This document shows, piece by piece, positions 1-6,475 of a stretch of 64,000 nucleotides of DNA; positions within the stretch are counted from its first letter, which is position 1, and every line of letters begins with the position of its first letter. Source of the stretch: Paraphysomonas bandaiensis (Eukaryota; Protista; Chrysophyceae); assembly GCA_965644295.1 (NCBI GenBank), contig CBFFRP010000324.1, positions 248,001-312,000 on the forward strand. The letters are read 5' to 3'. The position numbers and the translations under genes are program-made. The notes beneath the pieces are model-generated. The model had not been told where the DNA came from. It searched no databases and saw only the letters and a program-made list of their open reading frames with translations.

Positions 1-3000
1 AACAAACAGATCCAAGTACTCGGGCTTGCGTCCATTGGTTACTATCTTTTGCATAAACTCCGCCAAGTACCTCCTTTGGCATTGCTTTATCAGAAACCTA
101 TTTCCAGAGAGTATAGAGCGAACAACATTCGAACTACGGACATCATCATCAACTCTATCCAAGAACCAAGTTAGATACGTGAAAACAATTTCTTGGTTCG
201 TCTCATTGTTTCTGACGAAGTTACTTAGTAAATCATTACATGCGCGAATGATTTTCTTAATAACAACATGAGGTTCCCCCAAACTCGCATCAAGCAGAGC
301 CACCTGAACGGCCATAATGTTGTCAATTGCACCCATGTTCGCCAATATTTTCTGAACTTCTGGGTCCTCTGTGTGCGGTGGTTCAAATTCAATTATTTTG
401 GTAGGCGCATTAACCTTTAGAAGGTCTGTCAATTCTACCATTATGTCATGAAGCTGATCCGCAACCCTGTTATCTTCAGCAGTCTTCAATTCCCCCCATA
501 TTTCAAAGTTCTCAGCAAACTTTTTCATCAATTTCAACTGCGACGATATGGAAAGGAACTTATCCTCAACTTTCGGATTTGATATTATTTGAATGTTTTC
601 CATTGCTTCACGTAAGCGTTGCTTTTCACTTTTATGTATCATAAGCAAATATAACGCCTCCTGTACTAAATTGGGATCCGAATACATAACAATATCCAAT
701 AGCGCATCATCGAACTTTGCAGGAATAAAGGCTGCACAGCTGTCGTCTGCATCCATGGTTCTCATGTAGATATCAACAGCATCACGACTTTTCCCATCAC
801 TTTCGGCATTATACCATTGCACGAACGCGTGAAATGATGACGACAGTTTTCTATCTTGAATTCTGTCGTGAACAATAGACAAAACACGCAAAATTCCGGC
901 AATAGTTCTGACTTCGCTCTCCGTTGTCGTTTTGTATCGTGCTGGCATTGTCCACGGTTTAACTACCTGTGCACCCTCAGCTATCTTTTTCAGCAACCTG
1001 GCTGCTCGAATCACTCTTATCAGTCTAAGTATACGAACCGTTTTTAGCGTTTTGGCAAAATTTGCAGCTCTTCCCAAGCCGGGAGAATCTATAGAAAGAA
1101 GAACGATATCCAAAGTGACGACGGCGATATCAATAAGATTAAATGGTGACTGGCAAAACGTGTGGACGTTTTCATACACAGCAGCGTAGCAGTACATTCG
1201 AATCGTCAATTCCAATATGAAAACAATGGAAACAGATAAATCAAAGGCATACAACCCAGCAAACGTTTCGGAGGGGTAAAACACTTGGACAGCAGAGAAA
1301 ACAGTCGTTACAACAACCAATGTGAGCACAAATGTCAAAAATTTCATCGACTCGAACACTCGCAAAAGCTTCAATTCGAATTTGTCACTGAGTTCAACTC
1401 CACCTCCTTCGTCCTTAAATCGCATGGATTTATGACTTTTTCCACGAGACAGGTTATTCGACGAAAGAGTCAGCTTCTTCGATCTCGCTCTATGTATCGC
1501 ATCACTCTTCTCCGACGGCATCACTTTTCGAGAGGCACGAAACGACTTTCCCACTGACGATAGCGATGACATGACTTGTCCTTTCACACTAGCACTTTTA
1601 CTAGCACGCGCCTTCGCAGCAGCTGCAGCAACGACGGATTCCAACGTCATGTACTCATCATTATCTTCATCATCCTCATCATCACTTGCAGCAACATCCT
1701 CCACTACAGTAGAGTACAGACGATGGTCATCAAGAGCATCCACGAGTGGGTTTATTATGTCTTGGAGTTGTTCAGGTGTACTGTAGTAGCCAAACCGAAC
1801 CAAATCAAGTAGTAGATCCATCATTTCTGCGGACAACTCATCGCACTTAGTTGTATCAAAGCTACTATGCAAGTAATCAGATATAATTTGTTGTAGCAAT
1901 CCGAAGCAGTACGGGCTACCCGAATGGTATTTATTAAAACTGCTGTGATGGCCTCCCTCTAAATCTGACGAAGTCTTAATAAGACGAGGAAATCTGGCCT
2001 CCACTTGCGGGTCTCTGTCAATATAGAGTGTGCGCAAAATGCGACACACGGGAGCTTTATACTGATTTATAGATGATTGTGTTTTCAGTATTGTAAGCAA
2101 CACCTCATAAGAATAAAATTTTTCTAAGAGCTCTATAGCCACATAATTTCGATCCAAACATAGATCAGCCACAAGGTACAGCTGGGCCACAAAATAATCC
2201 ATGATTTGTCGCTTCCTTTCGGTAATAGTTTTAGCTTTACCCGAATCCTTTCGTTTCAAACGCTTGGAACCGCCCCCAGATAATGCGGCATACGACTGCA
2301 GTCGCTTTCTACCTTGAACAGCCACCGTTGATGTACGCCTTAAGAGAGACAACTCATTCTGCATCGCCTTCGGTTCAGAGCTAGGAGGTTCGATGTACAT
2401 CGACGCCCTACCAGAAGCCTTATCACCATTAGCGCAAATGAAACGAAAAGGAACATCAGTACTGCGCCCGAAAAGAGTCTTCATCGTATAGTCGTCTGCG
2501 GAATCTGGAGATGCAAACCAACTCAATAAAAGGTTAGGAATGCCGTTCTCATGCAACGTGTATCCCCTAACGCATGATAAATTACCATCTGCAGGAAAAT
2601 ACATCTTCTTTTCCGACCACGGAATCTTCTTCAGAAACCTATCATCTTCTTTGATAGATATTAATACACTTCGGCATTTCTTCAATAAATTCGACGACGA
2701 CGATTCCATAGATATCGGAACAAACCCCAGAGGTGTTCTGTTCGGATTTCCACCACCGCGGGACTTCTTACCAGATCTAGATGGACTTGCATTGCTAAGG
2801 AACTTGGATGCCGCACCCCCTACTGAGGAATTGAGTCGAAACAAATTTTCCCTTTGAAAAAGAGCATTAGCAACTAAGCGCTGTGTGCTATCCACTCCGC
2901 TCGGACATGTGCAAGTACTCTGCACATAGCAATCACCCTCAAGTACAATAGAAATGAAGTCTTACCCTCAACAGCTTCAAAATAGTCACATTCATTTCAG

Positions 3001-5313
3001 TTTCAACTAATAAATCCAAAAATATTTTGATTTCTCTGTCTCGAACCTAAGCCACCATAAAAATACGAGCAAGCTATCATAACTTTATTGAGATATTTAC
3101 CTTCGTTTGCAACATTTGTAAATTATCTCGGAGCATTTCTTGGACACAAGCAACAGCAAGCACCTGGTCTTTGACCTATCCAGTTTGTCAAACAGCTGCT
3201 CGAAAATCATCTAGAATAGTCGCACCTGATTAAGCAGCAATGGAAAGTAATCCGCAATGCTGATTTGATTAATATGACTCTTCGATATTCCTAGAAACAA
3301 AACATTGAAGCAACTCTTCGCGAGCTCCTGCGTCAGGGACTGAGCTCGTCCGCCACCCATTGACCGGATGCTCGGCACCGTCTCGAGAGAATTTTGAACA
3401 ACTGTGTTGCCAGTCCTACGCCGAGGAATACCACTGGACACAGGCTCAGCCTCAACCAGAGTATTGCGCGACTTTTTGGTTTTATGAAGCGCCTCTATCA
3501 CCACATCCGCGAGTGACATACGACCACTGTTTTTGTCCTTCCCTAATCGCGCGGCTGAAGTCAAGCGTAGTATTTTACTTTTGCGTGCAGCGGAAGCGAA
3601 CGAAATTCGTTTTCTTGTTCCTTCGGGTTTAGGCATGACATCACGGAAGGTATCATTGTCACAATCGTCATCTTCAGCATTCTCCTTCCTCTCGTCGAAA
3701 TTGGTGCTATACGAATGTGACGTCAGTTTATTTAAACGGGTATTTTCATGTAACTCTTTCAGCATTCCCAGAGCGCACATCTCGACTATATCTAAGAGCA
3801 CATGCAATATTCCCTGTTCCCGAATCATTGTCTGCCTGATCACCACACGAGCAGATCCCACAGGCTCAAGTAGTGCAGTTATTTCATCATCAGAATGGGA
3901 CGAATCAACTGCGGGCGACAGGAAAACACATAAGAAATCCAGGCATGAAAGTAGTGTCTTGAACTCAGCTTCTACCAATGCTGACGGCATTGAAAGGATT
4001 TCTCTCGAGCGAACTGAGAGCTCAAACTTCCTTAGAATGGATGCCGCCTCCACACCCACAAATAGGTCAGCTCCCATAGTCTTGTGAGTCCTGGAAGAAA
4101 GCAGCAGCGGTAGGGCCATCGACCTGTCTTTTGAACCACAACATTCCGATCGAACTCCGTGCTTAGATTTTTTAAGAGAGAGCCAGAGGCCCTTACAGAG
4201 TAGCTGAATAACCGCGCCCTCTTGGACAGCAGTGCCAGCTTCCACTTGTTGTGACAACACCACCTCGAAAAGAGAGCAATCCCGGCGGTTCTTTACAGCA
4301 CACACACCGTCAGTTTCCATCTTCATATACAATCCTGTATTCAAGTCTCGAAGGGCAATGAGACCACCTCGATTCCCCACGGGCCCACCCTTAAACATGT
4401 CCTCGAATTCAACCATCCACAGAAGATTCGTACCAACATTGCAGTCCGACGCTGCGAACGACAGTTGTATGCTGTTGGACATAATGACATTAGCGCGTTG
4501 GGTAAGTCCTGGTTTCTGCTGATCCAATGTTAAATAGGTTGATGTCTCTGGCTCCTGAAGAGACACCAACTGCCCGGCCAGAATGTGTTTCGACTTACTC
4601 TCTTTGGCCTGCTGAAATATGTAAATAGTCCATATTGAGCTCTCGAGGGAACAGTTAATCTCTTTGTTGCCATCGGGGTTAGTCTTGGGTGCCTTTCTTG
4701 CAGCGTGAATATACTCACTTGATCTCTCATGAACTCGAATGAAACATTCGTTTTCGTTTACAATTTGCTGGCCTTCTCTGTCGTACTTATATCTAGGCAT
4801 AAATTCTACCCAGCTCATCGCATTTCCTCTTTCCATGAGTGTGACGCGCATATTCTCTCTCTCCTGCTTCGCAAGCAAAATTGATGACACCGTAAGAAAT
4901 TTCCGAGTTTTAACATGTCGCAGCTGTATCACATCACCGAAACCAACTAATTTACCAGTCTTCATAGCCATCAACTTCTCGTTTAATCTGTTTTCGTTTG
5001 ATGCAGCCATGATTAATTGTCGCTCGTGTTCCTTGTCATTCACTGTCAAAGAATTTCCACGTAAAGCTTCTGGCCCATCTTCCTCATCATCTCGCTGTAG
5101 TTGCATCATTCTGTCTTCATATTCTTTGACAGCATTGTATTGATTCTGTACAGTAACTTCCCACAGACAATTCTCAAAAGAGTGTGGATCTTTAATCAGA
5201 GACAAATCATCACTAAGAATATCTTCAGAAGAAAGCCAGCCATCATTAGGTTTGCTGTGTCGCAGACATACAATGTCACCAATGCGAAGCGACCCTGGAG
5301 CAGCCATGGCCAT
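1..5313 (-). CDS. ITPR: Inositol 1,4,5-trisphosphate receptor-like (IP3R/RyR superfamily) channel, 5' portion, with an inserted voltage-sensor domain; 3' part lies outside the window
   Basis: Exons 5313-3226, 3175-3101, 3046-2966 and 2919-1 (open at the edge), separated by three phase-0 GT-AG introns of 50, 54 and 46 nt. The translation has IP3R hallmarks: LRIGDIVCL at the N-terminus, FGDVIQLRHVKTRKFLTV (beta-trefoil/MIR), RQTMIREQGIL (RIH1), YFVAQLYLVADLCLDRNYVAI, LYIDRDPQ, LVRFGYYS, and RIH2 QKILANMGA...FVRNNETNQ...NGRKPEYL. Confidence 0.93.
985..1365 (-). other. Voltage-sensor domain (S1-S4) encoded in frame inside the IP3R-like exon 4
   Basis: Manual translation: FESMKFLTFVLTLVVVTTVFSAVQV (S1), FDLSVSIVFILELTIRMYC (S2 with FxxExxxR), PFNLIDIAVVTLDIVLL (S3 with NxxD), KTLKTVRILRLIRVIRAARLLKK (S4, a basic residue at every third position). 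Confidence 0.92.
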
Positions 5314-6475
5314 ACTAGAGTATTATATCGTCTCAATATAAATAATTCGTATACTATAATGAAGCATTCCTTACGACCTCTTTTATAAAGAAACCGATAT
5401 AACAATCTTAATCATCCTAATATTTCATTGCGTTCCATTCCATCATTCCATGAACACTGCAGTTGTTCTCTGTACTATAAATAGTAGCCTTAAGGTAGTG
5501 ATGCTCTGTGTATGTATAGTACTCGACTTACAGTATTTGCTTCCAATTTTGTGTAAAAAATCAGCAATTTTCTGTACTTTTGTGAGGTTTTGTGGTCAAC
5601 ATCTGGCATAACGGACAGAGCCATCAATTCAGTTTTGAGTTTTGAGGTAAAATGTAGAGTTTTTTTGCTGAAAAGCGCACCAGCATATCACACAAGACTT
5701 GTCTGCATACCATATTCCGGTATACACAGTACTATAAATTCCTACTGCACACTGCATACTCTGTCTACCGTATACTGCTGTATATGGCAGTACACCACAA
5801 CTGCCGTATATACGCCCTGCAGCAGTTGAAAAACGTGTGCTGAAATGGTTGGAATGAAACTACAATGAGCAGGTTAAAGGGTGCACATCAGGACACTAGC
5901 TGAGTGAGAAGTAGGAAGCGGAGAGTTTCAAGCTGGAAGAAGTTACTACAGGAGTTTCGTAGTTCTAAGTATGTATGTATTCTTATGCAGGTTTCCCTCC
6001 ATGTTGCGATAGCAGGTTTGATATTTGATTCTATTTACCTCCCCCTAAGAGTTGGCTGATTAATTTTTGAATGAACTCATACGTAGGTGAAATATATCTT
6101 ATTTTCTCAGCTATCCTTGAGAGTTATCCCACTCTTTAATATGCTTTCTTCTAATATATAGTATATCACATATCGACCTCATATTATATTACGCTGATAA
6201 ATATTGTACTACATACTATTTCGGTTCTTAGTACCTTACATATATATGAAAGCAATAGTAGGTATACTCTAAAAAAGTAATTCAAAGACAATTTCATGGG
6301 AGTATTATCATTGACTTATTACTGCTGAGGTTATTTCACCTCCCTTTGCCACTCTATTATACGAAACTACAACCCACCACAAGCGACACAACATAATACA
6401 ATCATGTGTCGAAATTCATTTAATAAACGGGTACGGAAAAACATCCAATACATGCTACAGCATGATCAGCACAGC

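What the first reader, a model, noticed from the sequence alone, without database searches (positions are those of the whole stretch)
850..1850. IP3-receptor-like channel with a complete voltage-sensor domain inserted into its cytosolic ARM region
Seen in sequence: exon 4 (2919 to 1, minus strand, absent from the ORF track) is stop-free. It reads IP3R ARM1 sequence (LLLDLVRFGYYSTPEQLQDIINPLVDALD), a low-complexity linker, four TM helices with voltage-sensor signatures, then returns directly to IP3R sequence (EVRTIAGILRVLSIVHDRIQDRKLSS, then RIH2). The signatures are S2 VFILELTIR, S3 FNLIDIAV and S4 KTLKTVRILRLIRVIRAARLLK with eight K/R at 3-residue spacing. No S5-P-S6 pore follows this S4. Established: canonical IP3R/RyR have TM helices only at the C-terminus, their own S1-S4 lacks a charged S4, and the insertion point matches a variable loop of ARM1. 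In skeletal muscle, voltage gating of RyR1 needs a separate protein, Cav1.1. Inference: sensor and release channel may be fused in one chain here. The VSD could sit in the plasma membrane and pull on an ER/vacuolar pore at a contact site, or it could sense organelle potential or pH in cis. I do not know of this architecture being described.
Basis: partly seen in the sequence, partly recalled or inferred. Interest (0 to 1): 0.95.

Follow-up and report, generated by a model that had tools for sequence, protein, structure and literature searches.

The report
Voltage sensor built into IP3-receptor channel
A marine protist, and about 90 related sequence clusters including pelagophyte and chrysophyte algae, make an IP3-receptor-type calcium channel with a complete voltage sensor spliced into a known regulatory loop of its cytosolic body, a combination I could not find described anywhere.

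Summary
Window 5313..1 (minus strand), continuing 3.8 kb left of the window, encodes one 2990-aa IP3R-family channel. Domain order: Ins145_P3_rec, MIR, RIH, central linker domain, about 115-aa disordered linker, S0-S4 voltage-sensor domain (VSD), return to the linker domain, RIH, RIH_assoc, 6-TM pore, zinc finger. Spliced mRNA contigs remove three 46-54-nt GT..AG introns and keep the VSD. An independent DNA contig is collinear. The fusion is a family: at least 90 clusters at 50% identity, 8 paralogs in this genome (plus one VSD-less gene), and named members in Chrysophaeum and Epipyxis. In 104 sequences the gating charge-transfer centre and S4 arginines are nearly invariant. The AlphaFold VSD matches Nav/Cav/KCNQ/Ci-VSP sensors at Z 13-14.5. 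The module replaces the "wedge loop" of the central linker domain, a latch on priming in human IP3R3, not an ARM1 loop. Six of seven IP3-contact residues checked are lost. Best reading: a voltage-controlled IP3R-type channel with sensor and pore in the same membrane. Nine literature searches found no prior description. Function is untested.

The parts
3226..5313 (-). Exon 1, starting at the ATG at 5313. It encodes the N-terminal suppressor/IP3-binding-like beta-trefoils and the start of RIH1.
   Evidence: Pfam Ins145_P3_rec aa 8-238 (E=9.6e-24), MIR aa 247-345, weak RIH aa 657-697. PDB match to IP3R3 residues 7-319. Exon end taken from spliced contigs.
4600..5292 (-). Ins145_P3_rec (suppressor / beta-trefoil 1) domain.
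4279..4575 (-). MIR / beta-trefoil 2 region. The strand that carries IP3R1 R265-T-T-G-R269 reads M-S-N-S-I here.
3176..3225 (-). Intron 1, 50 nt, GT..AG.
   Evidence: Skipped in RNA contigs of X1 and X3 and present in the DNA contig of X8. Ends checked.
3101..3175 (-). Exon 2, 75 nt.
3047..3100 (-). Intron 2, 54 nt, GT..AG.
2966..3046 (-). Exon 3, 79-81 nt depending on the equivalent cut position.
2920..2965 (-). Intron 3, 46 nt, GT..AG.
1..2919 (-). Window part of exon 4. The exon continues to window -3806 (L003:6194-10000) and encodes aa 749-2990.
1723..2238 (-). N-terminal half of the central linker domain (CLD), up to the insertion point. It corresponds to IP3R1 718-886 and IP3R3 718-883.
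   Evidence: phmmer against the PDB, profile search against the PDB, VIA superposition Z 24.8 on 8tk8_A 717-1198.
1384..1722 (-). Low-complexity, K/R/S-rich linker of about 115 aa before the VSD, predicted disordered.
   Evidence: AlphaFold pLDDT below 50 for model residues 188-284. Length is variable across homologs.
970..1380 (-). Voltage-sensor domain: amphipathic S0, then S1 (1279-1347), S2 (1174-1260), S3 (1090-1167) and S4 (970-1065).
   Evidence: Pfam Ion_trans E=3.5e-12. PDB sequence hits to Cav3.2, Cav1.2 and NavAb VSDs. AlphaFold pLDDT 86.8. VIA Z 13-14.5 to Nav, Cav, KCNQ, CatSper and Ci-VSP sensors. Residue conservation.
922..969 (-). Post-S4 connector carrying the family-conserved W-x-x-P-x-R-Y motif.
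   Evidence: Of 104 sequences: W/Y/F 94, P 91, R 96, Y/F 101.
853..921 (-). Return helix of the CLD. It is the counterpart of the animal IP3R helix that immediately follows the wedge loop.
   Evidence: The profile C-flank resumes at fish IP3R residue 963 (type-3-like) and 972 (type 1). Model helix 174-196 has pLDDT 96-98.
7..354 (-). Second RIH domain, in ARM2.
   Evidence: Pfam RYDR_ITPR E=1.1e-09. Aligns to IP3R1 1200-1310.

Best explanation
This is a real, expressed 2990-aa member of the IP3R/RyR channel superfamily. A complete, apparently functional Cav/Nav-type voltage-sensor domain (S0-S4) has replaced the wedge loop of the central linker domain (CLD). Most likely the four VSD helices and the six pore-domain helices sit in the same membrane (cis), giving 10 TM helices per subunit and 40 per tetramer, with the VSDs at the periphery. 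Voltage-driven movement of S4 would pass through the short conserved W-x-x-P-x-R-Y connector to the CLD helix that follows the wedge loop. That would bias the resting-to-primed transition of the cytosolic assembly (ARM2 retraction, CLD torsion), which IP3 binding drives in animal IP3Rs. Because the canonical IP3-contact residues are largely lost, voltage, probably together with cytosolic Ca2+, is proposed to replace IP3 as the controlling input. Shown here: gene structure, expression, architecture, insertion point, family-wide conservation of sensor residues, and loss of IP3 contacts. Inferred: cis topology, the coupling route, and voltage control of gating. Unknown: the polarity of the voltage response, which membrane the channel sits in, and its ion selectivity.
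For: Gene and expression. The spliced mRNA contigs of X1 (8319 nt) and X3 (8481 nt) skip three GT..AG introns and run unbroken through window 1-2919. The DNA contig of X8 is collinear. The CDS is 8973 nt with one terminal stop.

Domains.

VSD identity. Pfam Ion_trans E=3.5e-12. PDB sequence hits to Cav3.2, Cav1.2 and NavAb. AlphaFold pLDDT 86.8 with VIA Z 13-14.5, rmsd 1.9-4 A over 112-135 residues, and every top match a voltage sensor.

Functional constraint in 104 family sequences. S2 Phe 99, S2 Glu/Asp 104, S2 Arg 96, S3 Asp 103. The four central S4 positions are Arg in 81-99 (Arg or Lys in 93-101). 78 of 104 keep 7-8 periodic basic residues.

Family. 94 clusters at E<=1e-30. At least 55 match the N-flank, VSD and C-flank. 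There are 8 paralogs in this genome, falling in at least 3 well-supported clades interleaved with other organisms.

Insertion point. Profile positions 4-190 align to animal IP3R 716-913 and positions 425-565 to 963-1122. The flanks superpose on hIP3R3 717-1198 at Z 24.8. The wedge loop Pro897-Glu958 is a regulatory latch on ARM2 retraction (PMC10613215).

IP3 site. R265, R269, K508, Y567, R568 and K569 are substituted; only R511 is kept.

Topology. The VSD has an even number of helices with both ends cytosolic, which is compatible with insertion into a cytosolic loop (direct reading).
Against: There are no functional data of any kind. The height of the CLD above the membrane in solved IP3Rs may be hard to bridge. 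Only about 10 protruding S4 residues plus a 16-residue connector follow S4, and I could not measure the distance because model coordinates and full-length folding were unavailable. In muscle the SR membrane voltage barely changes during Ca2+ release (PMC6080890, PMC6080887). A cis sensor in an ER-like store might therefore see little signal, unless the channel lives in the plasma membrane, a vacuole or another energised membrane. The selectivity filter here is T-E-G-L-G-Q rather than G-G-G-V-G-D, so Ca2+ selectivity is not assured. Conserved sensor residues show constraint, not that S4 movement gates this pore. Helical-bundle Z scores near 13-14 can arise by chance, so the fold result rests on its agreement with the sequence evidence.
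Confidence: 0.6

Rival explanations
1. Trans, or contact-site, coupling. The VSD sits in the plasma membrane or another apposed membrane and the pore in the ER or vacuole, so one chain bridges two membranes and performs DHPR-RyR-type excitation-release coupling by itself.
For: The cytosolic faces of both modules point the same way, so it is topologically conceivable. The long disordered linker before S1 would allow reach. The CLD lies on the lateral periphery of the cytosolic assembly (PMC10613215).
Against: S1 is the first hydrophobic segment to emerge, at about aa 1272. It should act as a signal-anchor that brings the ribosome to the ER, after which all ten helices are inserted at the same translocon (established biogenesis; inference). 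No pathway is known that inserts a four-helix domain with a charged S4 post-translationally into a second membrane. Only about 20 residues, carrying a conserved motif, connect S4 to the CLD, which argues for a packed connector rather than a long tether.
Confidence: 0.07
2. The four-helix module is a voltage-insensitive membrane anchor, lipid sensor or assembly element. It keeps a VSD fold but only tethers or positions the cytosolic domain.
For: Several VSD-like domains, including the S1-S4 of IP3R, RyR and TRP channels, have no voltage-sensing role. One named homolog model (Aureococcus, P0250) lacks S4 altogether, so S4 may be dispensable in some lineages.
Against: An anchor would not need the S2 Phe, S2 Glu/Asp, S2 Arg, S3 Asp and 5-8 periodic S4 arginines. 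These are kept in 94-104 of 104 sequences despite only about 28% mean column identity. The missing S4 in Aureococcus may be a mis-called intron.
Confidence: 0.15
3. The VSD is itself a conduction pathway (Hv1-like proton path or omega-type path) that supplies counter-ion current during Ca2+ release, rather than gating the pore.
For: Store Ca2+ release needs charge compensation. VSD-only proton channels exist in many protists (PMC10377628, listed).
Against: S1 has no acidic residue in its core where Hv1 has its selectivity Asp (S1 read directly). S4 carries 8 rather than 3 charges, with no Hv1-type R-x-W-R-x-x-R pattern. The nearest sequence and fold relatives are Cav, Nav and KCNQ sensors, not Hv1.
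Confidence: 0.05
4. Artefact: an assembly chimera, a retained intron or a mis-joined gene model.
For: None found.
Against: Independent DNA and spliced RNA contigs are collinear across the VSD borders. The same architecture occurs in 8 paralogs, two of which have different intron positions inside the VSD, and in at least 90 clusters from other organisms.
Confidence: 0.01

Closest known systems
Animal IP3 receptors (IP3R1-3; e.g. PDB 8tk8, 8ear)
   Same: Same order of Ins145_P3_rec, MIR, RIH, CLD, RIH, RIH_assoc, 6-TM pore and zinc finger. The CLD/ARM2 flanks superpose at Z 24.8. S6 and the post-S6 H-N-M-W-N-Y-L-Y-F motif are conserved.
   Different: The wedge loop (hIP3R3 Pro897-Glu958) is replaced by a linker plus a charged VSD. 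Six of seven IP3-contact residues checked are lost. The filter is T-E-G-L-G-Q instead of G-G-G-V-G-D in this gene.
Voltage sensors of Cav/Nav/Kv7 channels
   Same: S1-S4 fold, S2 F-x-x-E-x-x-x-R, S3 Asp and periodic S4 arginines. Sequence E down to 4e-9 and Z 13-14.5.
   Different: No S4-S5 linker and no S5-P-S6 follow. S4 leads into a cytosolic helical domain, and the pore it may control lies about 1100 residues downstream and belongs to another channel family.
VSD-effector fusions: voltage-sensing phosphatase Ci-VSP, and the sperm Na+/H+ exchanger SLC9C1
   Same: A VSD whose S4 is linked to something other than a canonical pore. The Ci-VSP sensor matches at Z 13.3 (4g7v). The SLC9C1 comparison rests on my own knowledge and was not tested here.
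   Different: Here the VSD is inserted inside the effector's cytosolic domain, with both ends attached, and the effector is a giant tetrameric release channel.
Cav1.1-RyR1 excitation-contraction coupling
   Same: Conceptually, a voltage sensor controlling a Ca2+-release channel of the IP3R/RyR superfamily.
   Different: That system uses two proteins in two membranes, with auxiliary proteins. This is one chain, most likely in one membrane. The resemblance is functional analogy only.
Oomycete PKDRR proteins (PMC7399828)
   Same: Another stramenopile case in which IP3R/RyR-type domains are recombined with a different channel module.
   Different: PKDRR proteins join a polycystin channel to RyR-type domains. 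No VSD is inserted into an IP3R body, and Phytophthora and Saprolegnia IP3Rs gave no match to the fusion profile.

Membership tests
IP3R/RyR Ca2+-release channel superfamily | N-terminal beta-trefoil domains (Ins145_P3_rec, MIR) | tested here: met
   Pfam E=9.6e-24 and 5.1e-08. PDB IP3R3 residues 7-319, E=8e-24.
IP3R/RyR Ca2+-release channel superfamily | RIH and RIH_assoc domains | tested here: met
   RYDR_ITPR E=1.1e-09. RIH_assoc E=6.5e-08.
IP3R/RyR Ca2+-release channel superfamily | C-terminal 6-TM pore domain with IP3R-type S6 and a C-x-x-C...H...H zinc finger | tested here: met
   PDB IP3R3 E=7e-40, with the alignment showing S6, C-F-I-C-G and both His. TM scan.
IP3R/RyR Ca2+-release channel superfamily | Selectivity filter G-G-G-[VI]-G-D | tested here: not met
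   This gene has T-E-G-L-G-Q. Other VSD-bearing members, including Chrysophaeum P0228, keep G-G-G-I-G-D.
IP3-gated IP3 receptors (sensu stricto) | IP3-coordinating residues R265, R269, K508, R511, Y567, R568, K569 (IP3R1 numbering) | tested here: not met
   They read M, I, T, R, S, H, I respectively. The pattern is similar across the family.
IP3R/RyR Ca2+-release channel superfamily | Tetrameric Ca2+-permeable channel activity; juxtamembrane Ca2+ site | not tested
   Needs expression. The Ca2+-site residues (hIP3R3 E1882, E1946, T2581) were not mapped because I held no human reference sequence.
[quoted passage not shown] | Significant sequence match to S1-S4 | tested here: met
   Pfam Ion_trans positions 4-112, E=3.5e-12. 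Cav3.2 E=4e-9.
[quoted passage not shown] | Four-helix antiparallel bundle fold | tested here: met
   pLDDT 86.8. Z 13-14.5, rmsd 1.9-4 A over 112-135 aa, all top matches being VSDs.
[quoted passage not shown] | S4 with at least 4 basic residues at every third position | tested here: met
   Eight here. 78 of 104 family sequences have 7-8.
[quoted passage not shown] | Gating charge-transfer centre (S2 Phe, S2 acidic, S3 Asp) | tested here: met
   99, 104 and 103 of 104 sequences.
[quoted passage not shown] | Gating charge movement in response to voltage | not testable with these tools
   Needs electrophysiology.
Hv1 voltage-gated proton channels | Selectivity Asp in mid-S1 and a three-Arg S4 (R-x-W-R-x-x-R) | tested here: not met
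   The S1 core has no acidic residue and S4 has eight charges without the Trp.

The most novel reading that the evidence does not exclude
This is a self-contained voltage-gated Ca2+-release channel. In a widespread family of marine algal and protist IP3R homologs, a Cav-type voltage sensor grafted into the wedge-loop latch of the central linker domain has taken over from IP3 as the primary gating input. Membrane potential would then open a giant IP3R-type pore directly, within one polypeptide. This would be a third solution to voltage-to-Ca2+ coupling, beside canonical Cav channels and the two-protein Cav1.1-RyR1 system.
Probability: 0.4. Interest if true: 0.92.

Novelty: new variant of a known kind. 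Interest (0 to 1): 0.85.

Why it matters
Voltage sensors are known attached to pores of their own superfamily, to a phosphatase and to a transporter. IP3R/RyR channels are known to sense voltage only indirectly, through a separate Cav1.1 protein.

A conserved natural fusion would offer three things. First, it shows that the IP3R cytosolic machinery can accept a mechanical input at the wedge-loop position, giving structural biologists a handle on how that latch controls priming. Second, it is a candidate mechanism for fast Ca2+ signalling in ecologically important algae, including brown-tide pelagophytes and chrysophytes, whose Ca2+ channels are poorly known. Third, it is a possible template for engineered voltage-controlled store release.

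The family has sat unnoticed in public databases. One member, UniProt A0AAD7UD70, is auto-named simply "Inositol 1,4,5-trisphosphate receptor".

Tried and rejected
Assembly chimera and retained intron were rejected (plus paralogs and homologs).

Splicing-out of 985-1365 was not seen in either mRNA contig. Minor isoforms cannot be excluded, because contigs drop rare variants.

The Hv1-like reading was rejected on S1 and S4 residues.

The trans two-membrane model was judged unlikely on biogenesis grounds. It was not tested.

Foldseek alone on the VSD-only model gave weak E-values (2e-3 and worse), so I relied on VIA Z-scores and sequence evidence instead.

ESM Atlas by features and by shape gave no family-level or taxon information. 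The search of earlier findings by words returned nothing.

The organism could not be named. Its own proteins are absent from or masked in the protein database, and run labels are coded. The nearest named family members are ochrophyte algae, and the 2024 survey's report that diatoms lack IP3Rs (PMC11085791) argues against a diatom.

Aureococcus P0250 was not counted as a full member, because its gene model lacks S4.

My initial statement that all IP3R-type genes here carry the VSD was corrected. A ninth, VSD-less gene lies on contig C144.

Complex prediction was not used, since no protein-protein binding claim is made. The Ca2+-binding-site residues and the geometric reach of the S4-CLD connector could not be evaluated.
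Full report
**1.
Joined to the left-adjacent DNA of the same contig (the window is G000:C324:248001-312000), the open frame runs from window 2961 to -3806, 2256 codons.

Pfam places Ion_trans (E=3.5e-12) at exon-4 residues 527-646. It covers only profile positions 4-112 of 241, which is S1-S4 without a pore. RYDR_ITPR follows at 856-971. The upstream ORF carries Ins145_P3_rec (E=9.6e-24), MIR and the start of RIH1.

The left-adjacent 1269 residues carry RIH_assoc, six hydrophobic helices, an IP3R-type S6 and a C-F-I-C-G...H...H zinc finger. They match solved IP3R3 at E=7e-40. So a channel domain is present downstream.

**2. It is one expressed gene, not a chimera.**
Contigs from four public runs were laid on window 1-5400.
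- Two runs (X1, 8319 nt; X3, 8481 nt) skip three short stretches of 46, 54 and 50 nt. These are canonical GT..AG introns on the minus strand, so these contigs are spliced mRNA.
- Both mRNA contigs run without a joint through 1-2919, including the VSD at 970-1380.
- A third run (X8) gives an unspliced 10.3-kb contig collinear with the assembly.
- A marine-plankton metatranscriptome (X4) holds an identical 269-nt piece over 771-1039.

The spliced CDS is 8973 nt, 2990 aa, with a single terminal stop. The runs differ from the window by a synonymous G>A at 1123 and an in-frame extra Gln codon in the linker. Both are ordinary strain variation.

**3. The inserted module is a bona fide voltage-sensor domain under selection.**
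- By sequence it matches VSDs of Cav3.2 (E=4e-9), Cav1.2 and Cav1.1 domain III, and NavAb/Nav1.7-VSD2.
- An AlphaFold model built on 76 homologs (pLDDT 86.8, pTM 0.72) shows an amphipathic S0, four long helices and a 32-residue S4.
- All 50 top Foldseek hits are voltage sensors.
- VIA-align gives Z 13-14.5, rmsd 1.9-4 A over 112-135 residues, to Nav1.7, Cav3.2/3.3, Cav1.2, KCNQ5, CatSper and the isolated Ci-VSP sensor.

Conservation across 104 family sequences with about 28% mean column identity:

| Position | Residue | Count of 104 |
|---|---|---|
| S2 | Phe | 99 |
| S2 | Glu/Asp | 104 |
| S2 | Arg | 96 |
| S3 | first Asp | 103 |
| S3 | second Asp | 95 |
| S4 | four central positions, Arg | 81-99 (93-101 counting Lys) |

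78 of 104 keep 7-8 basic residues at the eight periodic S4 positions; this gene has all eight. That pattern is the gating charge-transfer centre plus gating charges (established knowledge of Kv/Nav sensors). It would not be maintained in a mere anchor. S1 lacks the mid-helix Asp of Hv1.

**4. It is a family, not a singleton.**
- An exhaustive profile search with N-flank, VSD and C-flank found 94 clusters (50% identity) at E<=1e-30.
- At least 55 match the whole profile inside 2000-3700-aa proteins. About 40 more are fragments with the VSD plus one flank. Four-domain Cav/Nav-type channels come next.
- Named members are two paralogs of the chrysophyte Epipyxis sp. PR26KG and a protein of the pelagophyte Chrysophaeum taylorii (KAJ8601792.1, UniProt A0AAD7UD70), auto-named "Inositol 1,4,5-trisphosphate receptor".
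- An Aureococcus protein has S1-S3 and the post-S4 motif, but its gene model lacks S4. This is unresolved.
- Animal, Phytophthora and Saprolegnia IP3Rs give no match.
- The window's genome has eight loci with the fusion, the same eight that hold strong RIH_assoc/pore matches. Two of them split the VSD with introns at other positions. A ninth, divergent IP3R-type gene on C144 lacks the VSD; a positive control with the same method scored above 100.
- In a maximum-likelihood tree the own-genome paralogs fall in at least three well-supported clades interleaved with sequences from other organisms. So do the two Epipyxis paralogs. The family therefore diversified long ago.

**5. Where exactly it is inserted.**
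- The N-flank aligns to IP3R1 718-886 and IP3R3 718-883. Downstream, exon-4 residues 738-809 align to IP3R1 1062-1133.
- With the family profile, positions 4-190 align to animal IP3R 716-913. Positions 425-565 resume at residue 963 (type-3-like) or 972 (type 1). Positions 190-425 (linker, S0-S4 and connector) have no animal counterpart.
- A 633-residue AlphaFold model (pLDDT 77, pTM 0.63) has a disordered 97-residue linker before S0. Its helical flanks superpose on human IP3R3 717-1198 at Z 24.8, with about 340 residues at 3.1 A.
- In the nomenclature of PMC10613215 this is the central linker domain (CLD, 665-1100), not ARM1. The replaced segment coincides with the "wedge loop", Pro897-Glu958.
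- That paper shows the wedge loop plugs a cavity between CLD, ARM1, ARM2 and ARM3 in the resting state, stabilises ARM2 in the extended conformation, carries the PKA site Ser934, and leaves on priming.
- The connector from S4 to the return helix is short, about 16-20 residues, and carries a conserved W-x-x-P-x-R-Y motif.

**6. Other functional residues.**
- Of the seven IP3-contact residues checked, R265, R269, K508, Y567, R568 and K569 are substituted and only R511 is kept. Most of the family shows the same. This agrees with the scan's sister note s1-442409.
- The selectivity filter is T-E-G-L-G-Q here. The family has three filter types, including canonical G-G-G-[IV]-G-D in Chrysophaeum and others. 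So the fusion arose on an ordinary Ca2+-release channel, while the selectivity of this particular paralog is uncertain.

**7. Mechanism.**
Shown: the architecture, the insertion point, the constraint on sensor residues, and the loss of IP3 contacts.

Inferred:
(a) Sensor and pore share a membrane. S1 is the first hydrophobic segment to emerge and should target the nascent chain to the ER, where all ten helices are inserted at one translocon.
(b) S4 movement is passed through the conserved connector to the CLD return helix. This would bias the ARM2-extended to ARM2-retracted priming step that the wedge loop controls in animals.
(c) Voltage, probably with Ca2+, substitutes for IP3.

Caveats. I could not measure whether the connector can span the CLD-to-membrane distance. 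In addition, SR voltage is nearly constant in muscle (PMC6080890, PMC6080887). A cis sensor would therefore be most useful in a plasma, vacuolar or otherwise energised membrane. The location is unknown.

**8. Novelty.**
Nine full-text searches were run, eight of them aimed at novelty and one at IP3R domain nomenclature. I also read an oomycete InsP3 review, the Aravind-lab paper on ER Ca2+-system evolution and a 2024 algal Ca2+-channel survey. None of these described a VSD inside an IP3R/RyR-type protein. The library lacks most subscription journals, so absence is not proof.

I classify this as a new variant of a known kind: two known modules in an undescribed, conserved arrangement. Interest is high because it makes voltage control of an IP3R-type channel, and the role of the wedge-loop position, directly testable.

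Noticed in passing
L003:6194-10000 (window -3806..0), pore region; full-protein aa about 2693-2700: The selectivity filter reads T-E-G-L-G-Q where IP3R has G-G-G-V-G-D. Across VSD-bearing homologs there are three filter classes: G-G-G-[IV]-G-D, x-E-G-[LIV]-G-x and G-E-Y-G-[VI]-S-H-E. This suggests divergent ion selectivity within the family.
   Followed up: partly
G000:C144:about 123800-134200 (L017, L018), minus strand: A ninth, divergent IP3R-type gene (Ins145_P3_rec, MIR, RIH, RIH_assoc) without a VSD. It is a natural comparator. A Na+:neurotransmitter symporter (SNF) gene lies just upstream at C144:136561-138522.
   Followed up: partly
P0250 (Aureococcus anophagefferens, NCBI 'Inositol 1,4,5-trisphosphate receptor'), residues about 1174-1340: It has S1-S3 and the W-x-x-P-x-R-Y motif, but the 22 residues of S4 are missing from the gene model. 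This is either a mis-called intron or a genuine loss that would break the topology.
   Followed up: partly
window 2920-2965, 3047-3100, 3176-3225: Introns are unusually short (46, 54 and 50 nt) and canonical GT..AG. This may help identify the lineage and tune gene prediction for this genome.
   Followed up: no
window 1123 and 1507: All three organism-A runs laid (X1, X3, X8), DNA and RNA alike, differ from the window by a synonymous G>A at Ala1347 in S3 and an in-frame TTG insertion (one extra Gln in the linker). This points to a strain or allele difference between the assembly and these runs.
   Followed up: partly
G000:C426:39139-43918 and C409:4607-9490: Two paralogs of the fusion gene carry introns inside the VSD, near the S3-S4 boundary and S4, at positions not shared with the window's gene. 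The C409 pore region shows several in-frame stops that may be introns or decay.
   Followed up: no
window 284-307 and 1343-1362 (run X4, record 7): A 4622-nt metatranscriptome contig touches the window only by two stretches of 20-24 nt with 2295 other letters between them. This is a spurious or unrelated match, not evidence for splicing out of the VSD.
   Followed up: yes
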